In this document: in pieces, positions 354-40,622 of the stretch
Position numbering within the stretch: position 1 is the stretch's first letter
How the letters are laid out: each line of letters begins with the position of its first letter
Notes under the pieces: generated by a model
The model's input: the letters and a program-made list of their open reading frames with translations, nothing else
Database searches by the model: none
Told to the model about the DNA's origin: nothing
Position numbers and translations under genes: made by a program
NCBI GenBank assembly: GCA_002269645.1
Contig: NIVC01002395.1
Location: forward strand, 114,453-178,452
From: Macrostomum lignano
Lineage: Eukaryota
DNA: 64,000 bases
Reading direction: 5' to 3'

Positions 354-390
<37 letters not shown>

Positions 391-511: not shown

Positions 512-544
<33 letters not shown>

Positions 545-567
545 GTCTGTCTGTCTGTCTGTCTCTG

Positions 568-652
<85 letters not shown>

Positions 653-780
653 GACTGACTCTCTGTCTGTCTGTCTGTGTCTGTCTCTGTCTGTCTGTCT
701 ATCTGTCTGCCTGTCTGTCTGTCTGTCTGTCTGACTGACTCTCTGTCTGTCTGTCTGACTGACTCTCTGTCTGTCTGTCA
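230..780. repeat. (GTCT)n microsatellite in a PNPLA intron
   Basis: Direct reading; it generates the spurious CLSV ORFs. Confidence 0.95.
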
Positions 781-815
781 GTTGCCAACCCAGCCCGCCC
801 CCCTTCAATCCGCAG

Positions 816-10951: not shown

Positions 10952-13900
10952 TCATCGCGCGACGCTCTGTGTGAGCTGCACCGGCTGCAGGCCGCACTGC
11001 TTCACGTCCGTCACGTCCTGGTCTGTAAGACGAAACGTGAATAACGGGCTGACGCTGCACTCTTCGATTGCTTTGACGGTGTATCGGCACCACCGGCTGA
11101 CGCTGAACTCCTGGCCAAGCTGGCAGGGCGAAGACCGCGCCTTGCCGCCAAGTCGGGGCTCCTCCACAATCAGATAGCAGCTGGCGTTGCTGCCGTCCGA
11201 GTCGGCGTCGTTTGAAACATTTGACCTGCCAGCCTCGGATGGCAGCAGGCGGGCCTTCAGCTTGGCCAAATCAACGTCCAGGTGCAGGCAGATCCCGGCT
11301 TGGTACGTTGTTGCCGCGGTTGACGCGTCCAAGCCTTCGGACAGGCTGCTGGGATTGCGGCCGAGCCCGGAGTCGTCATGCCGACTGCTGCTTCGGCAGC
11401 CTACGCCAACGCCGCTGCCGACGCTGCCGCCGCACGAATAAGTCGACGCGTCGGCCGCCTCAAGAGCGGCGTTGGTAGCCGCCGCCGCAGCCGCCGCAGA
11501 GACGGATGTAGCCGTGGAGCCGCGGCTGGTGGAGCGCAGGCCGGCCTGGCCAAAGCGGCGACTGAGCGGCCGGCTGCCGCTCGTGTGCAGAATTCTATAG
11601 CGAGTTCGGCTGCCGCCGATGCCAATGCCCAGCGGGCAGCAGAAGCTGCCGTCAGGCTGGCGCTGGAAGGGCGGCTGCAGCTCCAGGACGCTGTTGCTCG
11701 ACAGCTGCTGCTGCTGCGCCGTGGCCGCATCGAGGCTGTTGTCATTGTTGCTGGCCGTTGTCGAACTCGCCGACGGTAGGTCGCGCTGCACAGTGACGTG
11801 GAGGCGAACGTCGCCGCCTTTGACCTCCTTGACGTAGAGGGACCGGCTGCGGACGGACAGCACGGAAGCTGGCAGCACACTGCGGTTGTCGGGATCCACC
11901 ACGCTGATGAGGTAGTCGGACTCGTGGTCCAGGCTCACGCTTTCCATGGTGCGCATCGTCACCGGGTGGACGCTGCCCTCAAACACGATGGTGCGCGAGT
12001 CTGGGCGGGCCGTGCCGTCCTCGTGCCGGCCGAGCAGCTTCTCAACTCGGTAGATTTTGCGCTCCAAGCCGTTCACGGTGCCAATGATGAGGGTGTTTTG
12101 AACCGAATCAACGTCCAAAAAGAACTCGCCCAGCCAAGGCGTGTCGACGTCAATCGATTTCTCGTCGAATGTGACGTGGAGCACGAAGGTGGCGCGTTGG
12201 TCGACCCGGCGTTCCATGAGGAAGTTCATGAACTTGGGCGCCAGGCGGGACTCCTGGACTCGAAGCACCTTGCGCTCGGTGACGAGGTCCAGCAGCTCCA
12301 GAGGCTGGCCCATGTTAGGCAGCTTCACCATCAGGGTGTAGGGGGTGTCCCTGGCTGCGATCAGCTCGCAGCTGGCCTGCTCGTCCCCGGGTCGCAGAGA
12401 CGCCGTCTGCAACTGCGGCTGGTCGCCCTCCTTGCGGCACAGCAGCTGAACGTCGATGTTGCGTTTCAACTGGTCGGGCTCCGGCAGGGTCACCGTCATG
12501 CGCTCCTTGCGCACCTGGTAGATGATGCGCATGTTTGGCAGGTACCTGCGCCAGGGCAAGGATGGAAAGATGGAATTGATTTGTGCTGACTTTAGAGCAC
12601 AGACATGCTCAAGCGAGCCAATACTGTACGCAGGCTGTACTCATGCACACGCTCCCAGATCCCCGTGCTCACTTGCTAGTGGTATTCAGGCCGCTGGAGT
12701 TGTCGAACCTGCGCAGCTTCATAGCAGATTTGGACGTCGCTGTAGCAACAGATTTAGTTTGCATCGGCCTCGTGAACTGCTCCACATCGGCTTCAGCTTC
12801 GCCTTCGCCATCTCCGCAGCCGTCGCCTTCGCCCTGTGCCTCATCTTGGTACTGCTCCGCCTCCTGCTCTTCCAGCTGCTGGTCTTGCAGCTGTCGCTGC
12901 TGCTGCTGCTGTTGTTGTTGCTGTTGTTGTTGCTGTTGTTGTTGCTGTTGTTGCTGTTGTTGTCGATGACTTTCTCGCTGTCGCTGCTGCGGCGGTGGCG
13001 GCGGCGGTGCGGTAGCGATGGGGACTATGGAGACATCGGCGCAGGTTGCCGCGCCCTGGCTGCAGGTGCTCACCGTTGCGGACGCTTTGGCGCGCTGGAA
13101 CCAGGTGGCGAACCAGCAGGCTAGGAGGCCGAGCTCTTTCACTTCAACGTCCTGCTCGTGCGGCGTCAGCGACAGCAGTGCGGTGGCCGGCTGCTGGTGA
13201 CACTTTAGGCAGTACAGGTACTCGCTGTGCGGACTATAGGCTAGGCCAGGCCCCTGTAATTCAGATAAGAGCAGCTTGCGTGCAGGAGCAAGGGTGCTGA
13301 TCAGGTAAAATAAGAGCAGCTTGCGTGCAGGAGCTGGGGTGCTGTTCAGGTAAGATAAGAGCAGCTTGCGTGCAGGAGCTGGGGTGCTGTTCAGGTAAGA
13401 TAAGAGCAGCTTGCGTGCAGGAGCTGGGGTGCTGTTCAGGTAAGATAAGAGCAGCTTGCGTGCTAGAGCTAGGGTGCTGTTCAGGTAAGATAAGAGCAGC
13501 TTGCGTGCAGGAGCTGGGGTGCTGTTCAGGTAAGATAAGAGCAGCTTGTGTGCTGGAGCTGGGGTGCTGTTCAGATAAGATAAGAGCAGCTTGTGTGCTG
13601 GAGCTGGGGTGCTGTTCAGGTAAGATAAGAGCAGCTTGTGTGCTGGAGCTGGGGTGCTGTTCAGATAAGAGCAGCTTGTGTGCAGGATCTAAGATCAAGA
13701 AACTAAAACTTGAATTGAAAGGAAGAGTTCAGCTAGAGAGGGAATTGGTAGGGCTACAAAAATGCAGGCATGTAAAAAATGTGACTCACGTTCGGCTTGA
13801 CAGCGCAGTCCCTGTACAGCACCCTTGGCCGGCACCTGCCACAGGCGACCTGCCTGCAGTTGGGTTGGCAGCGCTCCCGGCCGTACAGCAGCACGTCAAA

Positions 13901-14029
13901 GCAGGCGGCTTCCTCGTAGCCGATCCCGGAGACGCCCAGCGGCATCAGCATCTTGTTTTCAAAGTCCACGTGCAGCCGGATCTCGCAAAAGTCCTGCGCC
14001 CATCTGGGGCACATCGAATGGTCCAGCAT
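10952..14029 (-). CDS. Uncharacterised ~804-aa protein with a polyQ tract and beta-rich repeated domains; exons 14029-13790, 13253-12673, 12545-10952
   Basis: Three minus-strand ORFs join with canonical, phase-matched sites: AAC|gtgagt...ttacag|GGG (phase 0) and AA|gtgagc...cgcag|G (phase 2). The start codon is uncertain (first in-frame ATG at 14029). No family recognised. Confidence 0.75.
13261..13680. repeat. 45-bp minisatellite in intron 1 of the minus-strand gene
   Basis: (ATAAGAGCAGCTTGCGTGCAGGAGCTGGGGTGCTGTTCAGGTAAG)n, about 9 copies. Confidence 0.92.
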
Positions 14030-14700
14030 AGCTTTAGTCTCTTGGTTGCAATTGTCACTTAGCAGTAAAAGTGAGGGCTCAATCTCGCTCTGCTCCACGC
14101 CCCAGTCTCTTTAAGACTCGATAGAGCTAAAAAGGACACTGTACGCGAATAGCATAGATAGCGCTGCCCCAGCTTGCTCGGCGCGGCAGAGGTTCTGGCC
14201 ATAGACAATTCCAACAGACAGACAGGGGCAGACTTGACTCAGCTGCTAAAATCGCCGCTTTCAATCAATGCTTCTAAATTTCACATTGAAATTCAGGTCC
14301 CCTACGAAATATAGCATGTGAAGTGGCACCAACCTCTTTACTCATTCAGGCTGAGTCAAACTAAACATCTTAGATTAGATTTTTGGAGTCCGAGTGAGCG
14401 AAGGGCCGCGCGGTCACACTTCAGTGGCCCCTCAAGGACTGCAATTGAGAAACAATTCTGAAAAAGAAACTTATTTAGAATGGAACAATAAAACGCGCTG
14501 TACATTATTCTGTGGATGAATTTGTGACACCCCGCTGACAGGTTAAATGAGTTTTCCTGCGCTGTTCTTTTTCTCTCTGCCAAGTTTTGTCTTTCTTTCT
14601 GCCGCTGGCTGCTTATTAAAAGCAGCAATTTTGACGCAAGGCTTGGCGAACCCTCAGGCTGCCTTTAGAACTCTTTAACCTTGCTTGAGGCAGTTCCGAC

Positions 14701-17735: not shown

Positions 17736-17979
17736 AATAAGCTGGACAATGTCTACCCTATCTAATTTTAGAAAGTGCAAAAAACCCAGCATAGAAGATA
17801 ATTTTCTAACAAATCCCCATTCTTGGAACCCCATTCAGCCCCAGAAACGGTCAGTAAACACGGAATCGTCAAAAGCAAAGGCAGCAAGAGCGAGGCAAGG
17901 CGCCACAGTCAGCCACATCAGCAACAACAACAGCATCAACAACAACAACAACAACAAGGAAGATTCAAAAGTCTCCGCC

Positions 17980-20826
17980 ATGCGCAAGACGTCGAGTCCG
18001 AAACTGCGAGCGGCCACTCTGGCCCTGTGCGTGCTGGGCATCGTCCTCTGCCTCGCCGCCATGGGCCTCGCCCTCACCGTCCAGGGTCCAGCCAGAAGCC
18101 TGCGGCCGGTGCTGAGCTACGCTGACTCTGCCTACGTACCGATGTACCTGGACATGGCGGCTGCTGGCCTGGTTGTCCTGGCCGCTCTGACCGCATTAAT
18201 CAGCCAGCTGTACGGGAATCGAGGCCTGGACCTTGCCGCCTGTATCACCCTGGCCTTGGCGGCTGTTCTGGCTTTGGCCGCGCTGGGGCTGGCTGGCAGC
18301 TTGAAGGCCGGCAGCGCCCAGACCGGGCTGGAGGCCAGCCTGGACAGCTCGCTGCAGCGGTACGGCCCGAGCGATACGGCTCTGTACGAGGCCTGGAACC
18401 AGCTGCAGAAAGATGCCAAGTGCTGCGCTGTCCGCACCAACAGGGCTCAGATGGTGAGACTTCAAGTGCTTGTGTACTTCTAAAGTTGGAATGGGGAGGG
18501 TGAGCTCAAGCACACACACACATGTGTTAATGGGACAGTGAGCTCAAGCACACACACATGTGTGAACGGGACAGTGAGCTCTAGCACACACACGTGTGAA
18601 TGGGACAGTGAGCTCTAGCACACACACAGATGTGTGAATGGGACAGTGAGGTCAAGAGCACACACACAGATGTGTGAATGGGACTCAAGCACTCAAGCAC
18701 AAGCACTCCAGGACTCAAGACTCAAGCACACACAGGTGTTTCTATCATTACTTGCAAGTACTCGTTGGCCTTTTTTGAGTTCCTCATGACGTCGCGGCCC
18801 ATTGCTGAGTAGGTAGCACTCAACCCGCCCTCCTCCAGGCCTACAAGAACACGCCCTGGTACCGCCAGCTCAGCGAAGGCACACCGCACACGACGCCAAA
18901 CATTCCGGACAGCTGCTGCACCGCAGAGGCGCACGCCGACCCGGCCAAACTGGCCGACTGCACCAACAACCGGCCGGCCGTGCCCTCAGAGAATCCCTAC
19001 ATGCATCCTATCGGCTGTTTTGAGGCCTGCACTGCCGACTTGGAGGCCTTCAGTAATCGGCACATTATCGTCGGCGTGTTGGTGTTTTTTGGTGCCGTTC
19101 TGGCCGCCGGCCCCGTTGCTTTCGGCCTGGTGCAGAGCTGCAGACAGCAGGCAGGCAATCAGCTGAAGCAGAAACAGCGGGAACAACAATTTGGCAACTC
19201 GAGGCCAGGTAACAATATTTCATCTTCAATCGTAGAAACTTGAACAAAGTTGAGAGATTCTCAAAGTTACTGACAGATTCCCAAGGTTACTGCAAAACTT
19301 CCAAAGGTCGCTAAGAGATCCCCCAATTTTATGAAGAATTCCCAAGGTCATCGAGAGATTTCCAAGGTCGCTAAGAGATCCCCCAATTTTATGAGGAATT
19401 CCCAAGGTCATCGAGAGATTTCCAAGGTCGCTAAGAGATCCCCCAATTTTATGAGGAATTCCTAAGGTCATCGAGAGATTTCCAAGGTCGCTAAGAGATC
19501 CCCCAATTTTATGAGGAATTCCCAAGGTCATCGAGAGATTTCCAAGGTCGCTAAGAGATCCCCCAATTTTATGAAGAATTCCCAAGGTCATCGAGAGATT
19601 TCCAAGGTCGCTAAGAGATCCCCCAATTTTATGAGGAATTCCCAAGGTCATCGAGAGATTTCCAAGGTCGCTAAGAGATCCCCCAATTTTATGAGGAATT
19701 CCTAAGGTCATCGAGAGATTTCCAAGGTCGCTAAGAGATCCCCCAATTTTATAAGGAATTCCCAAGGTCATCGAGAGATTTCCAAGGTCGCTAAGAGATC
19801 CCCTAATTTTATGAGGAATTCCCAAGGTCATTGATAGATTTCCAAGGTCGCTAAGAGACCCCAAATGTTTTTGAGGAATTCCCAAGGTCATTGAGAGATT
19901 TTCAAGGTCGCAAAGAGATTTCCAATGTTGTGGAGAAATTTATAAGATTATTAAACTTTCCGTAGGGACGTTCGGTGAATCTCAAAGTCATTGAGTGAGT
20001 TCCAAGATCATTAATAATTCCCAACCGCTCATGCGTTTTCCAAGGTTCCAAGATATTTCCCAAGATCACCGATTCATCCGACACTCTAGCCGTATTGCGG
20101 GATTCCCTCAAGGTCATTAGGAATTTCCATGACAACTACTTACGATGCCGCACGCTTCAACGTCATTTATCAGGCAGCGTAGTTGGCAGCTTGCGCGGCG
20201 GCCATCAGCAGTCTCTGCTGACGTCCCAGCCGCTCCGGTCGGGCTCCTCGGTGTACAACAGCCGGCACTCGCTGTTCAGCGAGCCGCCAGGCACTTGCGG
20301 GGGCGTCAACGGGCTCAACAGGCCGCCATCGGAGTCGTCTTTGCCAAGCGTGGCGGCCCGGTCACTGTTCAGTGAGCCGCCGGTTCGTCCGCCGCCCAAT
20401 GCTATCCACGCTCAACCGGTCAGACCTCGGCAGCAGAAGCAGCAGCAGCAGCAGCAGCCGCAGCAGCAGCAGCCGCAGCCGCAGCAGCAGCAGCCGCAGC
20501 CGCAGCAGCAGCCACCGGTACCGAAGCCCCGCGCCAGTCTGGCCAACAGTAGTGTAGCGGCCCAGTATCCCAGCGAAACCGGCGAAGAAGCCTCATTTGG
20601 CAGCTTGACAGTGGCCAGCCAGCCCGCGCAGCCGCAGCCGCAGAAATCAGCCGCCCCTCAGGCGCTGCAAGCGCAGCCAATGAAGCGACCGCCTCAGCAG
20701 CAGCACAAGCCGGCCATCGCCTTGTCCGCCCAGCCTCTGAAGCCGCGGAACCCACAGCAACAGCAACAGCGTCATCTTGGGCCGCCGCCGGTGCAGGCGG
20801 GCAAAAAACGGCAATCGAACTTTTGA
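17980..20826 (+). CDS. Tetraspanin-family protein with a long Q/P-rich C-terminal tail (~498 aa); exons 17980-18453, 18839-19208, 20174-20826
   Basis: GCCATG start, three hydrophobic helices, WNQLQKDAKCCA (CCG-like), IPDSCC (PxSCC), GCF just before TM4. Junctions ATG|gtgaga...ctccag|GCC (phase 0) and CCA G|gtaaca...ttatcag|GC (phase 1) are frame-compatible. Confidence 0.85.
18500..18735. repeat. 38-bp minisatellite family, array 2 (tetraspanin intron 1)
   Basis: Same unit as 15795-16036, more degenerate. Confidence 0.85.
19300..19925. repeat. 60-bp minisatellite (tetraspanin intron 2)
   Basis: About 10 units that align with the 60-nt lines, each built from three ~20-bp related subunits. Confidence 0.95.
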
Positions 20827-21740: not shown

Positions 21741-22209
21741 CAACCCTCTCATGTACATGTAACGCTCTTTGTGATAGATAAAATGAATAATTGCTATTGT
21801 TATAGTTCTAAGTTTATCATCATCTTATATAGTTGACCTACGATGTTGACTGACTAAGGACAGTAGAACACTTGTACTTATAAAAGATTGATTTCCCGTT
21901 GCCACTTGCACTTTAACAATTAATTTATAACGAATTTTGCTAATTTGGACCAACAGTTTTGTATAGTCTGTTTACAATTCAAATCTAGCTTTTAACCCTT
22001 TGCATCTACATTAATTGCTATGATCGTTTTGAATGCGATAAACTTTGTTATGAACATTATTGACAATACATTCCCAGTTAAATTTTACACGAGCTAAGCA
22101 TCATTCAATAATACTCTACTTTGCATCCGACTAGCATATGCAGCTAGTGTAACTGTTATAATTCATTTTGGCTTTTTCCTACTATCAGTAGCTTGCTTAA
22201 CAATTGGAG

Positions 22210-23890
22210 CAGTCGGGACACAGATCTCAAGGACACAAATGGTGCAGTTGGGACACAGATCTCAAGGACACGAATGGTGCAGTTGGGACACAGATCTCAA
22301 GGACACAAATGGTGCAGTTGGGACACAGATCTCAAGGACACGAATGGTGCAGTTGGGACACATATCTCAAGGACACGAATAGTGCAGTTGGGACACAGAT
22401 CTCAAAGACACGAATAGTGCAGTTGGGACACAGATCTCAAGGACACGAATGGTGCAGTTGGGACACAGATCTCAAGGACACGAATGGTGCAGTTGGGACA
22501 CAGATCTCAAGGACACGAATGGCGCAGTTGGGACACAGATCTCAAGGACACGAATGGTGCAGTTGGGACACAGATCTCAAGGACACGAATGGTACAGTTG
22601 GGACACAGATCTCAAGGACACGAATGGTGCAGTTGGGACACAGATCTCAAGGACACGAATGGTGCAGTTGGGACACAGATCTCAAGGACACGAATAGTGC
22701 AGTTGGGACACAGATCTCAAGGACACGAATAGTGCAGTTGGGACACAGATCTCAAGGACACGAATGGTGCAGTTGGGACACAGATCTCAAGGACACGAAT
22801 GGCGCAGTTGGGACACAGATCTCAAGGACACGAATGGTGCAGTTGGGACACAGATCTGAAGGACACAAATGGTGCAGTTGGGACACAGATCTCAAGGACA
22901 CAAATAGTGCAGTTGGGACAGATCTCAAGGACACGAATGGCGCAGTTGGGACACAGATCTCAAGGACACGAATGGTGCAGTTGGGACACAGATCTCAAGG
23001 ACACGAATGGTGCAGTTGGGACACAGATCTCAAGGACACGAATAGTGCAGTTGGGACACAGATCTCAAGGACACGAATAGTGCAGTTGGGACACAGATCT
23101 CGAGGACACGAATGGTGCAGTTGGGACACAGATCTCAAGGACACGAATGGTGCAGTTGGGACACAGATCTCAAGGACACGAATAGTGCAGTTGGGACACA
23201 GATCTCAAGGACACGAATAGTGCAGTTGGGACACAGATCTCGAGGACACGAATGGTGCAGTTGGGACACAGATCTCAAGGACACGAATGGTGCAGTTGGG
23301 ACACAGATCTCAAGGACACGAATAGTGCAGTTGGGACACAGATCTCAAGGACACGAATAGTGCAGTTGGGACACAGATCTCAAGGACACAAATGGTGCAG
23401 TTGGGACACAGATCTCAAGGACACGAATGGTGCAGTTGGGACACAGATCTCAAGGACACGAATAGTGCAGTTGGGACACAGATCTCAAGGACACGAATGG
23501 TGCAGTTGGGACACAGATCTCAAGGACACGAATAGTGCAGTTGGGACACAGATCTCAAGGACACGAATGGTGCAGTTGGGACACAGATCTCAAGGACACG
23601 AATGGTGCAGTTGGGACACAGATCTCAAGGACACGAATAGTGCAGTTGGGACACAAATCTCGAGGACACGAATAGTGCAGTTGGGACACAGATCTCGAGG
23701 ACACGAATGGTGCAGTTGGGACACAGATCTCAAGGACACGAATGGTGCAGTTGGGACACAGATCTCAAGGACACGAATAGTGCAGTTGGGACACAGATCT
23801 CAAGGACACGAATGGTGCAGTTGGGACACAGATCTCAAGGACACGAATGGTGCAGTTGGGACACAGATCTCAAGGACACGAATGGTGCAC
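22210..23890. repeat. 35-bp minisatellite (GGGACACAGATCTCAAGGACACGAATGGTGCAGTT)n
   Basis: About 48 units; source of the many ORFs 22193-24013. Confidence 0.95.
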
Positions 23891-26853
23891 TTTGGGAACA
23901 TGCGACGAACAAGTGAGGCAATTGCTCCACTTGTTCCAAGCATGCACTGTGCAATTCTCGAGAGTATATCTTCACGAAAGCTTCCAGGAATAGAGCAACA
24001 GTGGAAAAATTGATGTCACGGTTTGCAGTCGACGGTCAATGTGACACTATGCGTGTCCTGTCGTTGCAAACGCTACAGAAGTTGACACCAAGCTTCCAGT
24101 AGGCCTACATCCGCGTGTATCCGTGTTGGCAAATGTTTGCCCACTGCACAGAGCAATGCTGGCTACGAGTACACTTGGATCACCAAACAGCTGGTATATG
24201 TTCCACGCTTCCTTGTAAAGCGCTGCTGTTTGCTTTGTAATTCAAATTTCACCCAACTTCCGTTTGGCACCAAAAAGTGACTTTTCTTATTAAAAAAGCT
24301 TCCTGTTTCGATGAAGTGAATTTATGAAATCTTTGGGAAGAAGATGATTGACTCGATTCAAAAGCTACAATCATGTTGCAGATGCAAAATTTCTCCGATT
24401 TACAATAGCTAGACTACAGTAGATGTTTTACTGATTAAGTTACATCATATATTAGCAGCAGAAGCAGCTATATATAGAAATACACTAGCAATCTGCGCAG
24501 CCCGATAAGGAAAGCAGCAAGGCAAGAGAATAAATATTTTTGAATAAATTACATGTAGCTTTTGGCCTTGTACAGCCACTATATTGTTAGTTTTTTAAAG
24601 GAAAATCATGTTTGAAGCAAAGAAGCATCCGCCCTGAAATCCAGCTATCTGGGCTAAGCTATCAGCATCTCCTATGAGCTTTGGGATCAAAGCCTCCCTT
24701 GAAGACATCGCTCAACCCTGACTCTCCCTTCGATACTTAGCCTACTAACTCCCAATTGATCCCTGGCATCTGAGCAACCCTTTTCCCGTGAGTCACAGCA
24801 TTTTAGCAATCCCCCCCCCTGCATGAACGAGATTTCAGCAATTTCTCCATGAGTCTTCTGTGGTTGACAAGGTGATTCTTTTATGTTAAGTTATTTTCTT
24901 TTTGTTAAGTCTGCTTCAGTTGATGAAAGCTTTTAATAAAAATATTTTTATATGATCAAAATTCCAACTTAGGTAGCTGCATTAGCAGTTCAGTCTGCTC
25001 TCATCTAGGCTAACTTTCGTTCATTGTAGCACTTTACTAGGTAGATAGATATCTAGAGCCAAACCATTTTTAGTATAGTGGACTAGCACAAAAATAATGC
25101 CCCCCTTTGGGGCGACCAGTAAGAAAGGGATGAAATTTATTTTTGTGAATCCTTTGCCTTGACAGCTCAGCAATCCCCTCGTAAGTCATGACATCTCATC
25201 AATTTAGTAGAGTGGAAACGACTAATTAATTGCTTATGAATTAGTTCTCTCATCAAGCCGCTTAGAGTAAAAATTACAGGAAGCAGTTATGGCATAATAA
25301 AGTTCTCAAGCAGTCAGTATCAGTCTCTATTACAGTTAACTAAAGGGTCGACGCAGTCTAAATCAAGTCTAAGTTGCAATTGTTACGCAATTCAGGCCGG
25401 CGTCTGCTGAGTTACCAGGCGCTGTCTTATGATGCAATCATCATTCAACTCTAATCGAAATGCCTAGTAGTGGAGAACAATTCTGCTCAAACTTTGCAAA
25501 AAAACATGTTTTTTTAATATGTAATATCCTGATCATTAAGACATTTCTTAGCCACGACCCGTAGCGTCACCGGAAATTGTCTAATCGAATGGTGCAAGTT
25601 TCATGAAAATTCGTTGGGCTGTTTTTTTCTGAAATCAATCAATTATTCTCGTAGATGTAATGTAGATATAAATAACTTGTAACGACGTCGTACTCAGTCT
25701 TAGTACAGTGATGGAGGAACTCGGCCAGATTTTTAAGTTTCCACCCGAAACAGTAGTCAAATTTCCTCATCTCAGTCCCAAGTGACGTAATTCATATACC
25801 ACACCTGTGGTTTTGGTCAACTGTGAGTGACGCAATCACAAATTGGCTTCCCCAGCTTAGGCTGGTGAGGAGAGACTGAAGAGTTATGGCCAGAGTTGGA
25901 GTAAAGCTGCCACTTGGTGTCCTCTGGTTCAATGCAATGTTTTCCGCTCATTCTTATTATGAATCACATGGAAATTCTATAGAGACATTTGTTTATTTGC
26001 TTCTAAGGCTATCTGAATCGCCTTTACATGTAGGATTGTAAGGACGTGTTGTTCACCTGTACTCGTAATCACCATGCAAATCATCTAGAACTTTCTCATG
26101 CTTCGTGAACGAAATATGAGCTATGCAGCAGTTTTTAGACATCTATAAATTTCTATACGACTACCGTCACAGCATCTCCCTGCGCCTTTCTGCCGCGTTA
26201 TTTACGAGGTCCTAATCCAGATTTTCTAGGGCTCTCTAAGAAAGCTACAGGGCCAGGAGCAGCTGTCCTACCTGTCTATTTCGCCGAACCACAGGTAATA
26301 CTAGAAAAGCCAGTGCTTTTATACTACTTTCGACTTATGATTGGCATGCCAAATGCAAAGACCCCATGTAATTCGGTTTGGTCTTCTTTTGCCTTAAGTA
26401 GCTGGTTATCTATTTTAAAGTATTGCTTTTTTCCAACTGTTTCTTAAACCCTTCCCGCTACAATTCCGAAGCTATTGCATCAATACTCAGACTAAGCGTT
26501 GGAGAAACTCGAAATCAATCAATCAGACTATTTTAAAGAGGCTTGAAGCAACGAAGAGTTGAGAATAAGCCAGTAGCAATAGTGTAAAGCTGTGCCTTTT
26601 CAATTAGCAGGCTCTCAAGCCGAGTTTCCAATGCCGTCTATTTGAGACTAAGAAATCTCAAAGCAGGTTTCGTGGCGGGTTTTCATTTGCAAGCCGCATT
26701 GAGGAGATTTCAAGGAGATCGACAGAGACATGGAGACATGGGAGGCAGCCAACGTACGGCTGGGTGGGGGGACGCAACAAGCTGTGGGCAATTCTGTTTA
26801 GACATTTCGAGAGTTTATCAATTTGCAGCTCCGCACACACGCAGCTTCAATCC

Positions 26854-27305
26854 TTAACGACGCCGCCTATTGCCGGATCCTTCGTGTGGATTCACGGGCC
26901 ACCAGCGCTTGCTAATGTAGGAATCGGGATAATTATCCCAGGCGCTGGCTGGCAGCTCCAGGGAGGGCCTGCCGTGGCCAACCCTCTTCACCTGGATGTT
27001 GTCAGCGTCATAGTACTTCACGGGCCACCAGCGCTTGCCTCTGCGGGGCAGTTGCAGGTTGTTCAGATGATTTCTTAGAAGTACAAGTCATGTATCATCA
27101 TCAAAACTGAATTTTCCTCACCCAAATCGGCGCACCTCCAGTGGACGGGCGCTACAGATGGCTGCGGCGGCTGTAATTTTAATGGTTCCTTGTAATCCAT
27201 AATTCATAATTCATAAGGGAAACTTTATACCCAACTCAAGAGGATATTCTTGGATCAGTTTTGCTTACCAATCAAAGCAACCAGCAGCACAGTGATCAGC
27301 TTCAT
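26854..27305 (-). CDS. Putative neuropeptide/peptide-hormone precursor, 101 aa; exons 27305-27269, 27170-27122, 27073-26854
   Basis: Hand translation: MKLITVLLVALIAAAAICSARPLEVRRFGNHLNNLQLPRRGKRWWPVKYYDADNIQVKRVGHGRPSLELPASAWDNYPDSYISKRWWPVNPHEGSGNRRRR*. It has a hydrophobic signal peptide, RR/KR sites and GKR. Introns are gtaagc...ttacag (phase 1) and gtgagg...ttctaag (phase 2), both frame-preserving. Confidence 0.85.
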
Positions 27306-27420: not shown

Positions 27421-27490
27421 GTATTATAATAGGCATCGCCTCCTCATTTGCGGGGGATGGAACAGGTCCAGATGGCTATCAGCCAATCAG
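27421..27490 (-). promoter_or_regulatory. Candidate core promoter of the prohormone gene: TATA-like TATTATAATA (27422-27431) and CCAAT box AGCCAATCAG (27481-27490)
   Basis: Motifs lie ~120 and ~180 bp upstream of the ATG, ~55 bp apart, as in typical CCAAT/TATA promoters. Sequence-only inference. Confidence 0.4.
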
Positions 27491-27524
27491 AGCGGAGACG
27501 GCCGAATGCCAACGTGTAACAGTA

Positions 27525-28010
27525 CTCAGAAATCTCTCCAGATGACCACAGATGCTGGACTGACAGTGCTCAGAAATCTCCCCAGATGACCAAGGATGCT
27601 AAACTGACAGTGCTCAGAAATCTCCCCAGATGACTAAACATGCTGGACTGACAGTGCTCAGAAATCTCTCCAGATGACCAAGGATGCTGGACTGACAGTG
27701 CTCAGAAATCTCTCCAGATGACCAAGGATGCTGGAGTGGCAGTGCTTAGAAAGCTCTCCAGATGACCAAGAATGCTGGACTGACAGTGCTCAGAAAGCTC
27801 TCCAGATGACCAAGGATGCTGGAGTGGCAGTGCTGAGAAATCTCCCCAGATGACCAAGGATGCTGGAGTGGCAGTGCTCAGAAATCTCCCCAGATGACCA
27901 AGGATGCTGGAGTGGCAGTGCTCAGAAATCTCCCCAGATGACCAAGGATGCTGGAGTGGCAGTGCTCAGAAATCTCCCCAGATGACCAAGCATGCTGGAG
28001 TGACTCAGAA
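27525..28010. repeat. 43/44-bp minisatellite (GATGCTGGAGTGGCAGTGCTCAGAAATCTCCCCAGATGACCAAG)n
   Basis: Direct reading. Confidence 0.9.
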
Positions 28011-28853: not shown

Positions 28854-29540
<687 letters not shown>

Positions 29541-30485
29541 AACAGATGACAGAACAGGCTATATTGAGCGAATTGTTATCAGTCTTTAATAAAAGCACTC
29601 GAAACGGAGAGAATTCTGAGGGGAATTTCAAAAGCCTGCATTTAGCCGCTCCTCACGCCACCCCAGTCGTCGCCTGAGTTGGCTTTCAACTCTGCCAATA
29701 ACCCTCTTAAGCCCATCCGGAACGCTGATTAGAACAAAAAAAATCCGGATTTTATTGAGGCTCGCCAAAAACATAGGCGCCAATATGAAACAAAAGCAAC
29801 ACGCGCGGTTCCGCTTTCAGCAACAGGCTCTCAAGAGAATTCGGAACGATTAGAAACCGCCCGCCCTAGCACTAATAGCCTATATAGCACTTGGGACACC
29901 CTAATGCGTAGAGAACTCTCCCCGGCTAGAGCAGACATCGATTCGAGTGGATTCAGCCTGCCCAGCAGCTACTGCCTGCAGGGAATTGATAATTGACAGG
30001 TCACACTATCGCCTCCCACTCCAGCGCAGCTTTACACGTCAAATACTCGAGTTATAGCATGCAGGCGATTTGATAATTAGCTATAGAAATCTAGCCTAGA
30101 AGCGCCGGTTGTCACAAGCCAAATAGCAAATGGAGCCAGTCAGTCATACAGCACTACACTATATTATTTAAATACTACACAGGCAAAAGAAGACCCGCTG
30201 TCATCTCTGTGCCCCCCTGCCCTGCTGATTTTCGAGTCTCTGTCTTATTTAGTGCGACCAGGGCCGCATGCATCAGCAGAGTGTGCTATCAATAATTGAT
30301 AACCCCCCCCGTCAGGCCTCCGCTTCTCTAGGCAAAGAATCTCTCTCTTAGTACAAGAAGACAAGAATATGGAGGGAGAAAGAGAAAGCAGCAAGTTGGG
30401 TGAAAACTCGAATCGGGGGGGGGAATCCATAATAACCCGTTAAGATGCACGGGTCACAGAGAATGCTTCGAACAGCCTATCTTAA

Positions 30486-34062: not shown

Positions 34063-34421
34063 TTATCCCACACCAGTGGAGCGCCGATTAACAATGCCGA
34101 ACACGGTCTCCCAGTCAAACTCTTCGTAAGTTTGAGTTTCCATCTCGCAGCCGGCAAAGCCGCTGCCGAATGCGTCGTTAGTTTGAGTCTCCATGTCGAG
34201 CAGCTGCTCAAGCGGATCTGGGCCAGCCTGAATGCCCAGAGTGATGGGCGGTGAGGCGCCGGAGCCAACGCAGACGCCTTGAGTTATGCCGGAATTGTTG
34301 GAATGAGACGATTGAGTCGCCTGCTGTTGCTGCTGCTGCTGCTGATAAGAGTACTGGACCCCAACAGAGTAACCATCCGTAGCAATAGGAGAAGTGTACT
34401 CTGTCTGAGTATGCATAGTGC

Positions 34422-34452
<31 letters not shown>

Positions 34453-36394
34453 ATTGGAATCTTGAAATGACACAACAGCAAAATTGGAACAGCTGGAGCC
34501 CCGGAAGCTGGCATGATCGTGCACCATCACTGGGCCAGTGTGATGATGCGCCCTGTACAGCATTGGCTGCTGCTGGCTGTACAGGTAAGACGGCGGGTGA
34601 AACTCATTAGTCAGGGCCGAGTCTGTCTGGCAGGCTCGGGTCTCAGTTGGCAGCGGCCGGGGCACCAGCGGCCGGTAACGGCTTGTTGGGCCCGATGCAT
34701 TGTTAGCATTAGCGCTGGCGTTAGCGCTGCTGGCAGCCGTAGCTTTAGCCGCGGCGGCGGCCGCATCAGCTGAGACGGACATCACCGAGGCTGAGGGAGC
34801 GCCGCCGCCAAGGCCGGTGAGCACAATCACCAGGTTCATTGGCTTTGGCGACTCACTGACGGCCGGAGCACTGGCGAGCGACGCGCTGACGTCGCCACCG
34901 AAGCCGCTGGCTGCGGCGGGACTCTGGACAACTCGATCGTCCAGATCAACGTCTTCGGCGTTGCCAGTCCGCCGCTGTTCATTCTTCAGTCCACGGCACT
35001 GCGGCCTGCGTCGTTGGCGCTGATTGAAGATGCTGTTAGCGCCGTGGCCAGTCTTCTTGAAGTGGCTGCGCAAGTTTTTCAAATCCCGATAGAACCGGGA
35101 GCACTCTTCGCAATTGAAGAATCTGCCGCAGTCGCGCAGGTGAAGGCCGAGCAGAGAGTCGGTTGGGAAGCGGCGGGAACAGTAGCGGCACTGGGATTTT
35201 TTCTCCACGTGCTTCCAGCTATAGTGCTGCAGGATTGAGCGTTTGGAAATTGTTTAAGGGATTTCCTGCTGACACTGCTAGGAGGATTCCCTGCTGACAC
35301 TGCTAGGAGGATTCCCTGCTGACACTGCTAGGGGGATTCCCGGCTGACACTGCTACGCGGATTCCCTGCTGACACTGCTAGGGGGATTCCCGGCTGACAC
35401 CGCTACGCCGATTCCCGGCTGACACTGCTAGGGGGATTCCCTGCTGACGCTGCTAGGGGGATTCCCGGCTGACACTGCTAGGAGGATTCCCTGCTGACAC
35501 TGCTAGGGGGATTCCCGGCTGACACTGCTAGGAGGATTCCCTGCTGACACTGCTAGGGGGATTCCCGGCTGACACTGCTACGCGGATTCCCTGCTGACAC
35601 TGCTAGGGGGATTCCCGGCTGACACTGCTAGGAGGATTCCCTGCTGACACTGCTAGGGGGATTCCCGGCTGACACTGCTACGCGGATTCCCTGCTGACAC
35701 TGCTAGGGGGATTCCCGGCTGACACCGCTACGCCGATTCCCTGCTAACACTGCTAGGGGGATTCCCTGCTGACACTGCTAGGGGGATTCCCGGCTGACAC
35801 TGCTAGGAGGATTCCCTGCTGACACTGCTAGGGGGATTCCCGGCTGACACTGCTGGGGGGATTCCCTGCTGATACTGTTGAGTTGAGGATTTTCTCCTGA
35901 CACTGCTAGGGTGCTAGGGGGATTCCCTGCTGACACCGTTGGGGTGGGGATTACCAGATGAAACTGCTAAGGGGGATTTCCAGCTGACACTGCAGGGAAT
36001 TCCCTGCTGACACTGCCGTGGAGATTCTGTAACTCATCTCACACTAAGCCGAAAATAAAAAACATCTAACCTGTTTAACTCTAGACAGAGTTGTAAAAAA
36101 CTCTCCCCGCAACTCGCTATACGGACAGTTGATCTCCGGACAATGGTAGCGCTTGATTTCCGGAGCCGCTGACACGGCCGCGGCCAGAGCGGCGCTCGGA
36201 TCAGAGCAGCGGTGAGTCTTGACCATGTGGAAGCGCAGATTGCTAGTGGAACGGAATGGCAAATTGCACAGAGTGCATACTAGCGGAAATTCCGGACAGC
36301 TGAACTCTCTAATGAGCTCGGCTTTTGTTGGAGTGATTTTCAGTACAGCCGGCTGCTGCCGCTGTTGATCACCATCCCCCTGGCCGGGAAGCAT
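34063..36394 (-). CDS. ATMIN: ATMIN/ASCIZ zinc-finger transcription factor (~495 aa); exons 36394-36071 and 35226-34063
   Basis: Four N-terminal Zn fingers (CTLC...HMVKTH; CPEINC...RVKQ|HYSWKH; CRYC...HLRDC; CEEC...HFKKTGH) and C-terminal LC8-binding TQT-type motifs (ACQTD, HTQTE, METQTN, METQTY). Phase-0 intron CAG|gttaga...ctgcag|CAC. Confidence 0.9.
35265..36015. repeat. 25-bp minisatellite filling the ATMIN intron
   Basis: (GCTAGGRGGATTCCCKGCTGACACT)n. Confidence 0.92.
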
Positions 36395-36463
36395 GCTAGT
36401 CAGCGTCTGTTAACTCGCTGCACAGTTGGCAACTTCATGCAATAACAGAAATTTAAAGCAGCC

Positions 36464-37975
36464 TGCACTGGGGTGTTTTATGGGTGGGGTTGCGTCGGGA
36501 GCAGTGTGCACTGGGGTGTTTTATGAGTGGGGTTGTGTCGGAAGCAGTGTACACTGGGGTGTTTTATGGCTGGGGTTGCGTCGGGAGCAGTGTGCACTGG
36601 GGTGTTTTATGAGTGGGGTTGTGTCGGGAGCAGTGTACACTGGGGTGTTTTATGGCTGGGGTTGCGTCGGGAGCAGTGTACACTGGGGTGTTTTATGGGT
36701 GGGGTTGCGTCGGGAGCAGTGTGCACTGGGGTGTTTTATGGATGGGGTTGCGTCGGGAGCAGTGTGCACTGGTGTGTTTTATGGTTGTGGTTGCGTCGGG
36801 AGCAGTGTGCACTGGTGTGTTTTATGGGTGGGGTTGCGTCGGGAGCAGTGTGCACTGGTGTGTTTTATGGCTGGGGTTGTGTCGGGAGCAGTGTACACTG
36901 GGGTGTTTTATAGCTGGGGTTGCGTCGGGAGCAGTGTACACTGGGGTGTTTTATGGGTGGGGTTGTGTCGGGAGCAGTGTGCACTGGGGTGTTTTATGGG
37001 TGGGGTTGCGTTGGGAGCAGTGTACACTGGGGTGTTTTATGGGTGGAGTTGCGTCGGGAGCAGTGTACACTGGGGTGTTTTATGGATGGGGTTGTGTCGG
37101 GAGCAGTGTACACTGGGGTGTTTTATGGGTGGGGTTGCGTCGGGAGCAGTGTACACTGGGGTGTTTTATGGATGGGGTTGTGTCGGGAGCAGTGTACACT
37201 GGGGTGTTTTATGGGTGGGGTTGTGTCGGGAGCAGTGTGCACTGGGGTGTTTTATGGGTGGGGTTGCGTCGGGAGCAGTGTACACTGGGCTGTTTTATGG
37301 GTGGGGTTGCGTCGGGAGCAGTGTGCACTGGGGTGTTTTATGGGTGGGGTTGTGTCGGGAGCAGTGTGCACTGGGGTGTTTTATGGGTGGGGTTGCGTTG
37401 GGAGCAGTGTACACTGGGGTGTTTTATGGGTGGGGTTGCGTAGGGAGCAGTGTACACTGGGGTGTTTTATGGATGGGGTTGTGTCGGGAGCAGTGTACAC
37501 TGGGGTGTTTTATGGGTGGGGTTGCGTCGGGAGCAGTGTACACTGGGGTGTTTTATGGGTGGGGTTGTGTCGGGAGCAGTGTACACTGGGGTGTTTTATG
37601 GGTGGGGTTGCGTCGGGAGCAGTGTACACTGGGGTGTTTTATGGGTGGGGTTGCGTCGGGAGCACTGTACACTGGGTGTTTTATGGGTGGGGTTGCGTCG
37701 GGAGCAGTGTACACTGGGGTGTTTTATGGCTGGGGTTGTGTCGGGAGCAGTGTGCACTGGGGTGTTTTATGGGTGGGGTTGCGTCGGGAGCACTGTACAC
37801 TGGGGTGTTTTATGGGTGGAGTTGCGTCGGGAGCACTGTACACTGGGGTGTTTTATGGGTGGAGTTGCGTCGGGAGCAGTGTACACTGGGTGTTTTATGG
37901 GTGGGGTTGTGTCGGGAGCACTGTACACTGGGGTGTTTTATGGGTGGGGTTGCGTCGGGAGCAGTGTACACTGGT
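36464..37975. repeat. 43-bp G-rich minisatellite, array 1
   Basis: (CTGGGGTGTTTTATGGGTGGGGTTGYGTCGGGAGCAGTGTRCA)n. Confidence 0.95.
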
Positions 37976-38811
37976 GTGTTTGTGGAATAAGCTTTTGTTA
38001 ATTTAATATAGAATAAATTTAATACTTGGTGTCTATAAATTTCTAGTGTTTTGAATTCCTCAGTAACGAAACAATAATCACCTAAACGAAGTGTTGCGCT
38101 GAAACTGGCAAGGATGCAACATGAAACTTACGCGAGAAGGAGAGTAAAGCATACAAACTAAAACGAAATATTACCATAAACTTGAACTAAAACACTATTA
38201 AAAATTAGGACGACAAAAAGCAAAACAATTAATCGATTTAATGAACTCGCCAGTTTATTGCGATTAATATTAACTTAAATTCGAATAATAATAATGAAAC
38301 AGTAGTGATAAAGATAATAGTAATAGTAATGATAATATGAATAATAGGCTCACCTCACACTCGAACAGTTATACTAACAGTGAAATCTGCTGCTGCTTAT
38401 TTAATAGTATCCATAATTTTGCTTCTGTTCTGCCGATAATAATACACTACATAAAAACAACTGACGCACAAGCATGGCTTTGCGCAGATACACAACAATT
38501 AGCGATAAAAACTACTGGAATGAACTTAAACAGTTTGCATTATATGCCCACAGCAATGCTTAAACAAGAAAACAGGAGTACACAGAAAGGCCACTAGCAA
38601 GCTTTAACAGGGAAATTGAAAACCTGAAAAACTGGCTGAATAACTTTTCTATCTTTGACCGCACTTTAACTTTTTATTGGCACCAATTCGAAGGACAAAT
38701 AGCAAAACAGTAGCAATCAAAATTAAAAAATTAAGCGTCAAATATATTCTATTATAATTCCTTCAGTAAAAAATGAACCTGCTCGCATCAAATGGAAGCA
38801 TTTTTATGTGT

Positions 38812-39850
38812 TACACTGGGGTGTTTTATGGGTGGGGTTGTGTCGGGAGCAGTGTACACTGGGGTGTTTCATGGGTGGGGTTGTATCGGGAGCAGTGTAC
38901 ACTGGGGTGTTTCATGGGTGGGGTTGTGTCGGGAGCAGTGTACACTGGGGTGTTTCATGGGTGGGGTTGTGTCGGGAGCAGTGTACACTGGGGTGTTTTA
39001 TGGGTGGGGTTGTGTCGGGAGCAGTGTACACTGGGGTGTTTTATGGGTGGGGTTGTGTCGGGAGCAGTGTGCACTGGGGTGTTTTATGGCTGGGGTTGTG
39101 TCGGGAGCAGTGTACACTGGGGTGTTTTTTGGGTGGGGTTGTGTCGGGAGCAGTGGGTGGGGTTGTGTCGGGAGCAGTGTGCACTGGGGTGTTTTATGGC
39201 TGGGGTTGTGTCGGGAGCAGTGTACACTGGGGTGTTTTTTGGGTGGGGTTGTGTCGGGATCAGTGTACACTGGGGTGTTTTATGGGTGGGGTTGTGTCGG
39301 GAGCAGTGGGTGGGGTTGTGTCGGGAGCAGTGTACACTGGGGTGTTTTATGGGTGGGGTTGTGTCGGGATCAGTGTACACTGGGGTGTTTTTTGGGTGGG
39401 GTTGTGTCGGGATCAGTGTACACTGGGGTGTTTTTTGGATGGGGTTGTGTCGGGAGCAGTGGGTGGGGTTGTGTCGGGAGCAGTGTGCACTGGGGTGTTT
39501 TATGGCTGGGGTTGTGTCGGGAGCAGTGGGTGGGGTTGTGTCGGGAGCAGTGTGCACTGGGGTGTTTTATGGCTGGGGTTGTGTCGGGAGCAGTGTACAC
39601 TGGGGTGTTTTATGGGTGGGGTTGTGTCGGGATCAGTGTACACTTGGGTGTTTTATGGGTGGGGTTGTGTCGGGAGCAGTGGGTGGGGTTGTGTCGGGAG
39701 CAGGGGGTGGGGTTGTGTCGGGAGCAGTGTACACTGGGGTGTTTTATGGGTGGGGTTGTGTCGGGAGCAGTGTACACTGGGGTGTTTTATGGGTGGGGTT
39801 GTGTCGGGAGCAGTGGGTGGGGTTGTGTGGGGAGGAGTGTGCACTGGGGA
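38812..39850. repeat. 43-bp G-rich minisatellite, array 2, with deletion-variant units
   Basis: Same unit as array 1, separated by an ~830-bp AT-rich spacer. Confidence 0.93.
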
Positions 39851-40622
39851 GTTTGGTCGACACAATGCGTACATTGAAGCTATAAAAACAAATTGAGCAA
39901 CACAAGAGAAGTTGTTCAAAGAAAACACCTCAGTTAAGATGCAAGAAATCTATGGATATTTTCCGTTAGCATCAGCAGAAACAAAGGAAGACAGTAAGGC
40001 GTATTTTCATAAAAACACAAGCAAATCAACTGATTAATGGTGCAAACTCTGCATACTACTTATGGAAGCAGAAGCTACAGAAAACAGTACAAAAACAATT
40101 TGCAGAGTAAATATAATATTTCACAAAAAACGCAGTGCCAACTGATTGAACAGGTCGAATAACTTATTTCTTAACTACTAATTGAAATAAACAACGGATC
40201 ACCTTAATTTTAATGGACAATAGGAATATCAAACCAAAAACGCAAAACTTTAACACTGGGAAAGTTCGACATAACCCACTCGAGAGGGTAGGAAAATCTG
40301 TTAATATACTTTTATTACTAACCTTTGTTGAACACATGCGAAGTTCTCAAGCAAGGGAACGCTGCCAACAGAAAACATGGAGTTCTAAACCCAGAGTCTA
40401 GGAAGGGAACTCAACCAGTGAAACATGGAGTTCTAAACTTAGTGTCTGGACAGGGAACCCAAACCGTGAAACACGGGGTTCTAAACGTAAGAGTCTGGAA
40501 GGGAAATACAGAATCGTAATACTTCAAACAAATTTGTCCTAGTACCAAATAGTACTATTCAGAGCTAAACCAGAAATACCTGAACAAAACAATCACTAAA
40601 ACAATAATGCCAATGACCCTCG

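What the first reader, a model, noticed from the sequence alone, without database searches (positions are those of the whole stretch)
26854..27305. Hidden neuropeptide precursor with twin WWPV peptides, missed by the ORF track
Three tiny exons (37, 49 and 220 nt; introns 98 and 48 nt) encode a 101-aa protein with a classical signal peptide (MKLITVLLVALIAAAAICSA|RP) and prohormone-convertase sites. Predicted products are FGNHLNNLQLPRR-amide (from GKR), WWPVKYYDADNIQV, VGHGRPSLELPASAWDNYPDSYIS and WWPVNPHEGSGN. The gene has an internal duplication: a 21-nt identity on the plus strand (TCACGGGCCACCAGCGCTTGC, encoding KRWWPV) and an xG....L[QE]LP spacer motif. A TATA-like and a CCAAT motif sit upstream. 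I do not recognise N-terminal WWPV peptides as any named neuropeptide family, so this may be an undescribed peptidergic signalling system with an unknown GPCR.
Basis: partly seen in the sequence, partly recalled or inferred. Interest (0 to 1): 0.88.

Follow-up and report, generated by a model that had tools for sequence, protein, structure and literature searches.

The report
Small flatworm secreted-peptide precursor gene

Summary
The sequence features are real. On the minus strand, 27305..26854, a GT-AG spliced gene encodes a signal peptide, clustered dibasic sites and two KR-WWPV units marked by an exact 22-nt in-frame repeat.

The window is Macrostomum lignano contig NIVC01002395.1. The gene is not hidden: GenBank lists it as hypothetical protein BOX15_Mlig007078g1/g2, 90 aa, at three near-identical loci. 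That annotation was built from RNA-seq transcript assemblies.

The annotation confirms exon 1, intron 1 and exon 2. The proposed FGNHLNNLQLPRR-amide therefore has no transcript support. The two WWPV peptides and the 24-residue spacer peptide stand.

The architecture looks like a prohormone:
- basic residues cluster in pairs (shuffle p about 0.001-0.004);
- the internal sites lack the furin P4 arginine;
- there is one GKR amidation signal, no cysteine and no Pfam domain.

No homologue turned up in 1.84 billion representative proteins, and no WWPV peptide appears in the searched literature. Tissue expression, processing and any receptor are untested.

Verdict: a candidate orphan peptide precursor, a new member of a known kind, of modest interest.

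The parts
27483..27488 (-). Inverted CCAAT box (GATTGG), about 55 nt upstream of the TATA-like element
   Evidence: Read directly. Identical in all three paralogous loci, but so is almost everything nearby. A weak motif-level observation.
27422..27431 (-). TATA-like element TATTATAATA, about 120 nt upstream of the ATG
   Evidence: Read directly. Function not tested.
27269..27305 (-). Coding exon 1 (37 nt): start codon and the first 12 1/3 codons of the signal peptide
   Evidence: Agrees with GenBank protein P0001.
27171..27268 (-). Intron 1, 98 nt, GTAAGC...TTACAG, 32% GC
   Evidence: Required to reproduce the annotated protein. It carries the 7-nt indel that distinguishes L002/L003.
27122..27170 (-). 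Coding exon 2 (49 nt): the end of the signal peptide (predicted cleavage ...CSA|RP after residue 20) and RPLEVRRFG
27041..27121 (-). Intron 2 as annotated, 81 nt, GTGAGG...CCCCGCAG
   Evidence: Joining 27122 to 27040 reproduces P0001 exactly. TTCTAAG at 27080-27074 resembles a CTRAY branch site 33-34 nt upstream of the CAG, and no other AG lies between them (read).
27041..27073 (-).
   Evidence: Open in frame, but 70% of shuffled 33-mers are also open. The AAG acceptor is unsupported by the annotation. The 101-aa product is not in the protein collection.
26854..27040 (-). Coding exon 3 as annotated (187 nt including the TAA stop): GKR, WWPV peptide 1, KR, spacer peptide, KR, WWPV peptide 2, RRRR
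26989..27030 (-). Predicted peptide 1, WWPVKYYDADNIQV, flanked by GKR and KR
   Evidence: Net charge -1.
26911..26982 (-). Predicted spacer peptide VGHGRPSLELPASAWDNYPDSYIS, flanked by KR and KR
   Evidence: Net charge -2.
26869..26904 (-). Predicted peptide 2, WWPVNPHEGSGN, flanked by KR and the C-terminal RRRR
   Evidence: Net charge -1.
27017..27038 (-). Copy 1 of the exact 22-nt direct repeat (encodes (G)KRWWPV(K))
26891..26912 (-). Copy 2 of the exact 22-nt direct repeat (encodes (S)KRWWPV(N)), 126 nt from copy 1

Best explanation
This is a real, expressed, lineage-restricted gene of Macrostomum lignano (Mlig007078). Its main product is a 90-aa prepropeptide. Shown: the exon-intron structure, the reading frame, the repeat, and the match to an RNA-seq-derived annotation. 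Inferred, step by step: the 20-residue signal peptide directs the protein into the ER and is removed after ...CSA. The 70-residue, cysteine-free, probably unstructured propeptide is packaged into regulated secretory granules. A PC2/PC1-3-type prohormone convertase cuts after the KR/RR pairs. A carboxypeptidase then trims the basic residues, and the Gly before KR is converted to a C-terminal amide. The expected products are WWPVKYYDADNIQV, WWPVNPHEGSGN, the 24-residue VGHGRPSLELPASAWDNYPDSYIS, and a short amidated N-terminal fragment (RPLEVRRFG-NH2, or RPLEV plus FG-NH2). The duplicated WWPV N-terminus is the most likely receptor-recognition element. The peptides would act as neuropeptides or peptide hormones on a still unknown receptor.
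For: The protein search returns a single hit, M. lignano hypothetical protein BOX15_Mlig007078g1, 90 aa, carried on three contigs. The window is identical to L001 (NIVC01002395.1) across the aligned gene region. That annotation derives from genome-guided RNA-seq transcript assembly (PMC5730564), so a spliced transcript exists. The 90-aa protein is reproduced exactly by 27305-27269 / 27170-27122 / 27040-26854. Coding signal: exons are 46-69% GC against 32-33% for the introns, and GC3 is 0.69, like neighbouring genes. The chosen frame has the best codon-usage score and no stops. Signal peptide: one Lys, then a 15-residue hydrophobic core (Kyte-Doolittle 3.2), then C-S-A with small residues at -3 and -1. 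AlphaFold2 gives a helix at residues 3-17 and a mostly low-confidence remainder. Of the 15 basic residues in the mature part, 12 sit in five runs (RR, KR, KR, KR, RRRR); only 0.36% of shuffles match this, and 0.09% for the long model. None of the internal sites has Arg at P4 (read from the sequence). By the established specificity of furin (R-X-[K/R]-R) versus PC1/3 and PC2, this points to the regulated pathway. One Gly-Lys-Arg amidation signal is present, and there are no Cys and no N-X-S/T sites. KRWWPV is duplicated by an exact 22-nt in-frame repeat. M. lignano has a nervous-system-expressed, essential pc2 homologue (PMC4490696). Planarian prohormone genes have this same architecture, and many of them are lineage-specific (PMC2953531).
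Against: No expression site, no peptidomics and no receptor could be examined. No homologue exists in any other organism in the databases searched, so there is no evolutionary evidence that the peptides are constrained. The three paralogous copies are too similar to test selection: one synonymous difference. There are only two repeat copies. The conserved element is N-terminal and the WWPV peptides are non-amidated and acidic, whereas most neuropeptide families conserve an amidated C-terminus. From memory, Trp and Val directly after a dibasic site are not favoured P1' residues for convertases; this was not tested. Mlig007078 did not appear in the supplements I could search, so its tissue of expression is unknown.
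Confidence: 0.55

Rival explanations
1. It is a secreted product of a non-neural gland rather than a neuronal signalling peptide. Candidate sources are prostate/seminal fluid, epidermal, pharyngeal or adhesive glands. It would be released whole or after limited cleavage, and would act outside the animal or on a mating partner.
For: It has a signal peptide, small size, no homologues and no fold or domain. From memory, this profile also fits the many orphan secretory proteins reported from Macrostomum prostate and other glands; I did not check this here. The acidic Tyr-rich stretches (YYDAD, DNYPDSY) would suit tyrosine sulfation of an extracellular protein, which is inference only.
Against: Basic residues are confined to KR/RR pairs far more than chance allows. 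The pairs flank a duplicated motif, a GKR amidation signal is present, and the internal sites lack a furin P4 Arg. Together these fit regulated-pathway processing better than a structural or enzymatic gland product.
Confidence: 0.25
2. The first reader's 101-aa model (48-nt intron 2, AAG acceptor at 27074) is the main or a substantial isoform. In that case the gene also yields FGNHLNNLQLPRR-NH2.
For: The 33 nt are in frame and open. A TTGAT branch-like site lies 27 nt upstream of the AAG (read). FGNHLNNLQLP and VGHGRPSLELP align from the first residue after their cleavage sites with a score reached by 4.6% of shuffles. This hints that the segment was coding in the ancestral duplicated unit.
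Against: All three annotated loci give only the 90-aa product, and the 101-aa sequence is absent from the protein collection. The annotation pipeline removed only alternative transcripts with identical CDS, so a distinct long isoform should have survived. By established knowledge of 3' splice sites, AAG is a weak acceptor. The four other acceptors I could define locally are all CAG. TTCTAAG fits a branch site for the downstream CAG. An open 33-mer is expected 70% of the time.
Confidence: 0.12
3. It is a young orphan ORF on an expressed transcript with no selected function. The prohormone-like features would then be a by-product of a recent internal duplication and composition.
For: There are no homologues anywhere, and no test of purifying selection is possible. 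The antisense frame across exon 3 is also open for 104 aa. This shows that open frames are cheap in this GC3-rich sequence.
Against: A canonical signal peptide split across a phase-1 intron, non-random clustering of basic residues, best codon usage in the sense frame, and retention of an intact identical protein at all three homeologous loci while flanks differ by 2-5%.
Confidence: 0.08

Closest known systems
Lineage-specific flatworm prohormone genes (planarian spp/npp-type precursors; Collins et al. 2010, PMC2953531)
   Same: Small size (about 100 aa), an N-terminal signal peptide, no cysteine framework, several peptides bounded by KR/RR, occasional Gly-KR amidation signals, and often no homologues outside a narrow clade. 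Dependence on PC2 is established in planarians, and a neural pc2 exists in M. lignano.
   Different: No sequence similarity. None of six related motifs (KRWW, RRWW, WWP, RWWP, KRWF, KRWY) occurs in the planarian prohormone supplements. The planarian genes were validated by mass spectrometry and in situ hybridisation; this one has neither.
MIP / WWamide (W-X5-6-W-amide) peptides of protostomes
   Same: Trp-rich short peptides cut from a multi-copy precursor.
   Different: The defining C-terminal Trp-amide and the W...W spacing are absent. Here the two Trp are adjacent at the N-terminus and the peptides end in V or N without a Gly.
PRXamide peptides (pyrokinin/CAPA/neuromedin-U type; cnidarian PRXamides)
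   Different: That peptide exists only in the unsupported 101-aa model. There is no FXPRL core, no receptor evidence and no homology.
Trp-rich cationic antimicrobial peptides (indolicidin, tritrpticin; synthetic KRWW peptides)
   Same: A WWP tripeptide, and a KRWW string in the unprocessed precursor. The literature hits for KRWW were mostly papers on antimicrobial peptides.
   Different: After processing, the WWPV peptides carry net charge -1 and only two Trp. They are not amphipathic cations.

Membership tests
Neuropeptide / peptide-hormone precursor (generic prohormone class) | N-terminal cleavable signal peptide | tested here: met
   The n-region is MK. The 15-residue hydrophobic core has a maximum Kyte-Doolittle(11) of 3.23. 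C-S-A lies before the predicted cut at 20|21, and the AF2 helix covers residues 3-17. This is a heuristic test only: SignalP was not available, and the cut site is uncertain by about 2 residues.
Neuropeptide / peptide-hormone precursor (generic prohormone class) | Peptides bounded by dibasic convertase sites, more clustered than chance | tested here: met
   12 of 15 basic residues lie in five runs; shuffle p = 0.0036 (90-aa model) and 0.0009 (101-aa model).
Neuropeptide / peptide-hormone precursor (generic prohormone class) | Repeated or conserved peptide motif next to the cleavage sites | tested here: met
   KR-WWPV occurs twice, through an exact 22-nt in-frame repeat. There are only two copies.
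Neuropeptide / peptide-hormone precursor (generic prohormone class) | Gly-basic amidation signal | tested here: met
   One GKR is present in both models. The amidated product differs with the model...RRFG-NH2 or ...LPRR-NH2.
Neuropeptide / peptide-hormone precursor (generic prohormone class) | Spliced, expressed mRNA | tested here: met
   Indirect. The GenBank model comes from RNA-seq-guided transcript assembly and is reproduced exactly. I could not inspect reads.
Neuropeptide / peptide-hormone precursor (generic prohormone class) | Expression in neurons or endocrine cells | not testable with these tools
   No expression data were reachable. The gene id is absent from the searchable supplements and from full-text search.
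Neuropeptide / peptide-hormone precursor (generic prohormone class) | Processed peptides detected biochemically, and dependent on PC2 | not testable with these tools
   Needs LC-MS/MS with and without pc2 RNAi. Predicted masses are given.
Neuropeptide / peptide-hormone precursor (generic prohormone class) | Conservation of the peptide motif in related species | tested here: inconclusive
   There are no hits other than the gene itself. It is unknown whether the databases hold other Macrostomum proteomes, and such short peptides are hard to detect.
MIP / WWamide | C-terminal Trp followed by Gly-basic (Trp-amide), with a second Trp 6-7 residues upstream | tested here: not met
   The peptides end ...NIQV-KR and ...GSGN-RRRR, and the Trp residues are adjacent at positions 1-2.
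FMRFamide-like / RFamide peptides | C-terminal Arg-Phe-Gly-basic | tested here: not met
   RRFGGKR has an extra Gly, so it gives ...FG-NH2 rather than ...RF-NH2.
Achatin (G-[FYW]-[GA]-[DE]) | GFGD-type tetrapeptide between dibasic sites | tested here: not met
   Only FGG lies between RR and KR; there is no leading Gly and no acidic fourth residue. An M. lignano achatin is listed among the sequences compared in the achatin figure of PMC6188537.
PRXamide peptides | C-terminal Pro-Arg-X-Gly-basic | tested here: inconclusive
   LPRR-GKR is present only in the 101-aa model, which lacks transcript support.
Trp-rich cationic antimicrobial peptides | Net cationic, Trp/Arg-rich mature peptide | tested here: not met
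   Predicted mature peptides have net charge -1, -1 and -2.

The most novel reading that the evidence does not exclude
The WWPV peptides would be a previously undescribed, macrostomid-specific neuropeptide family acting through an orphan receptor. Alternative use of two in-frame 3' splice sites 33 nt apart would switch an additional amidated peptide (FGNHLNNLQLPRR-NH2) on or off. One tiny gene would then encode two different peptide cocktails.
Probability: 0.15. Interest if true: 0.55.

Novelty: new member of a known kind. Interest (0 to 1): 0.3.

Why it matters
M. lignano is a transgenic, transparent, regenerating flatworm model whose peptide-signalling repertoire is poorly catalogued. A validated new precursor would add a ligand to that repertoire. 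It would also give an easily followed marker for a peptidergic cell type and a candidate for receptor deorphanisation. But lineage-specific orphan prohormones are common in flatworms. This one is already in the public gene set, and nothing here bears on a long-standing open question. The practical gain from this check is a corrected gene model and a concrete list of predicted peptides and masses.

Tried and rejected
(1) Homology. A word-indexed search of 5.8 billion proteins and a full HMMER scan of 1.84 billion representatives with the exon-3 product found only the gene itself. Pfam found nothing.

(2) Literature. WWPV, RWWPV, KRWWP, WWPamide and Mlig007078 gave no relevant paper. The motifs are absent from the planarian prohormone tables. 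McVeigh 2009 and Wasik 2015 are not held. No M. lignano cell atlas was found.

(3) Expression. Mlig007078 is absent from the supplements of Grudniewska 2018 and Wudarski 2017.

(4) Selection test. The three paralogous loci are too similar, with one synonymous change in the CDS, so the comparison is uninformative. The 33-nt segment shows no differences either.

(5) Intron statistics. A chimeric query meant to pull out neighbouring M. lignano proteins returned only tandem CYP4 proteins from other animals, so that search was wasted. Mapping those proteins showed that the local CYP4 gene has only two long introns. This gave just four local acceptors, all CAG.

(6) Other checks. Rfam and tRNA scans of the window were empty. 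The antimicrobial-peptide idea was rejected on charge. MIP, RFamide and achatin memberships were rejected on motif. The AF2 single-sequence model gives no confident fold, but low confidence is expected without an alignment, so it counts for little. I ran no further search on testing whether other Macrostomum species are in the database, because unnamed hits could not be assigned to species.

Full report
**What is in the sequence.**
They are separated by GT...AG intervals of 98 and 48 nt.

The internal repeat is real and one base longer than stated. GCAAGCGCTGGTGGCCCGTGAA occurs at 27038-27017 and 26912-26891. The copies are 126 nt (42 codons) apart and in frame.

**Where the window comes from, and what is already known.**
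A protein search returned a single hit: [quoted passage not shown], 90 aa (P0001). That protein is encoded on three contigs of assembly GCA_002269645.1. Its accessions are PAA58252.1, PAA83139.1 and PAA88489.1, and the UniRef entry is UniRef100_A0A267GT56 (RepID A0A267GT56_9PLAT). Across the 852 nt of gene and flanks that I aligned, the window is identical to one of those contigs, NIVC01002395.1 (L001).

So the gene is not hidden. It was invisible only to a bacterial-style ORF list. The paper describing this assembly states that the GenBank annotation was made from a genome-guided transcriptome. That transcriptome used STAR-mapped RNA-seq, StringTie/TACO and a de novo assembly, and only transcripts with identical CDS, non-coding transcripts or repeat-overlapping transcripts were removed (PMC5730564). 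An annotated model therefore implies an assembled, spliced transcript.

**The gene model.**
Joining exon 2 to position 27040 instead of 27073 reproduces P0001 residue for residue. The annotation thus confirms exon 1, the 98-nt intron 1 and exon 2. It places the intron-2 acceptor at CCCCGCAG|AGGC (27041|27040), which makes the intron 81 nt.

This is my reading of the sequence plus established splice-site knowledge, not a test.
- The other acceptors I could define locally (intron 1 and the two CYP4 introns) are all CAG.
- The exact 101-aa sequence is not in the 15-billion-protein collection.
- In favour of the long form, the 33 nt are in frame and open, but so are 70% of shuffled versions.
- Also in favour, FGNHLNNLQLP aligns with VGHGRPSLELP from the first residue after their respective cleavage sites. 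Only 4.6% of shuffles reach that score. This is a marginal hint that the segment was once coding.

I therefore treat the 90-aa protein as the main product and the 101-aa form as a possible minor isoform.

**Is it coding?**
- Exons are 46-69% GC and introns 32-33%.
- GC3 is 0.69, within the range of the neighbouring genes (0.54-0.82).
- The sense frame has the best codon-usage score of all six frames and no stops.
- The antisense frame across exon 3 is also open (104 aa). It scores worse and has no annotation.

**Protein features.**
- Residues 1-20 (MKLITVLLVALIAAAAICSA) have one Lys, a 15-residue hydrophobic core and small residues at -3 and -1. SignalP was not available.
- The 70-residue remainder has no Cys and no N-X-S/T site.
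- It has 15 basic residues, and 12 of them lie in five runs (RR, KR, KR, KR, RRRR). Only 0.36% of shuffles cluster as strongly, and 0.09% for the long model.
- None of the internal sites has Arg at P4. By the known specificities of furin versus PC1/3 and PC2, this fits the regulated secretory pathway better.
- A Gly-Lys-Arg amidation signal precedes the first WWPV.
- The predicted products are WWPVKYYDADNIQV, VGHGRPSLELPASAWDNYPDSYIS, WWPVNPHEGSGN and an N-terminal fragment (RPLEVRRFG-NH2, or RPLEV plus FG-NH2). The first three are net acidic.
- Pfam finds nothing.
- A single-sequence AlphaFold2 model is moderately confident only for the signal-peptide helix (mean pLDDT 54). This is weak evidence, because single-sequence models are often poor.

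**Relatives.**
A full HMMER scan of 1.84 billion representative proteins with the exon-3 product found only P0001. The three M. lignano loci are homeologous or allelic copies. Two of them (L002, L003) show a tetraspanin gene downstream, and the window also has a tetraspanin-type ORF on that side of the gene, at 17749-18483.

Flanks are 95-98% identical between copies, while the CDS differs at one synonymous site in one copy. Differences do fall in the introns and 3' UTR, but the counts are too small to demonstrate purifying selection.

Full-text searches for WWPV, RWWPV, KRWWP, WWPamide and the gene id gave nothing relevant. The planarian prohormone tables contain none of the six related motifs searched (KRWW, RRWW, WWP, RWWP, KRWF, KRWY).

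**Most likely mechanism.**
Shown: the gene structure, the frame, the repeat, and indirect transcript support. Inferred: secretion, packaging, cleavage after KR/RR by a PC2-type convertase, trimming, amidation of the Gly-extended fragment, and release of two WWPV peptides that act on an unknown receptor. M. lignano does have a pc2 homologue that is expressed in the nervous system and is essential for post-embryonic development (PMC4490696). I put this reading at about 0.55.

Rivals:
- A non-neural gland or seminal-fluid secretory product (0.25).
- A functionless young ORF (0.08).

**Comparison with known families.**
The gene works like the many lineage-specific flatworm prohormone genes (PMC2953531), but it shares no sequence with them. 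It fails the defining motifs of several families:
- MIP/WWamide: no C-terminal Trp-amide.
- RFamides: RRFGGKR gives FG-NH2.
- Achatin: no GFGD.
- Cationic Trp-rich antimicrobial peptides: the peptides are acidic.

A literal PRX-amide match (LPRR-NH2) exists only in the unsupported isoform.

**Verdict.**
The neuropeptide interpretation is plausible but untested. The WWPV motif appears undescribed. However, the object is one more orphan candidate prohormone in a phylum rich in them, and the gene is already in the public gene set. I class it as a new member of a known kind and score its interest at about 0.3.

Noticed in passing
window 27519-28004: A 44-nt minisatellite of 11 copies (92% matches) lies directly upstream of the putative promoter of the peptide gene. 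Alignments between the three paralogous loci are staggered here, which suggests differences in copy number.
   Followed up: partly
window 26764-27078 (+): A 104-aa ORF is open on the strand opposite exon 3. It scores worse on codon usage than the sense frame and is most likely a by-product of GC3-rich coding sequence.
   Followed up: partly
window 79-734, 3285-4679, 5418-6415, 13261-14062, 19226-19891, 22204-24013, 29021-29631, 36426-38006, 38773-39896, 44325-44750: Many long ORFs in the bacterial-style list are translations of tandem repeats (CLSV..., [13 protein letters not shown]..., GVFYGWGCVGSSVHW..., and others). Several lie inside introns of real genes. They are artefacts for gene finding, but they show how repeat-rich this genome is.
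   Followed up: no
window 1-9600 (+): Part of a patatin-domain gene (Patatin E = 4.7e-10 for the ORF at 7070-7603). It has large repeat-filled introns and runs off the window start. From the ORF sequences it looks like a neuropathy-target-esterase/PNPLA6-type gene, but that was not tested.
   Followed up: partly
window 43340-47825 (-): A CYP4-family cytochrome P450 gene with three exons and two long introns. Donors are GTAAGG and GTATCA, and both acceptors are CAG. One intron holds a repeat array at 44325-44750.
   Followed up: partly
window 48860-50902 (-), 57316-58089 (+), 60381-60959 (+): A 680-aa intronless ORF has no Pfam match. Nearby are a mariner-type transposase fragment (HTH_32/HTH_48) and a further ORF with no Pfam match. 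This part of the window may be a patch of mobile-element remains.
   Followed up: no
L001, L002, L003 (three contigs of GCA_002269645.1): The whole roughly 10-kb neighbourhood is present three times at 95-98% identity. This is consistent with the published redundancy and hidden polyploidy of the M. lignano assembly. Any read-mapping test of the splice junctions must allow for multi-mapping.
   Followed up: partly
window 17749-18483 (+), 34063-35208 (-), 40623-41582 (-): Other neighbours are a tetraspanin (its first large exon), a Gln-rich protein with a weak C2H2 zinc-finger match, and an NF-Y/histone-fold protein. None has an obvious functional link to the peptide gene.
   Followed up: no
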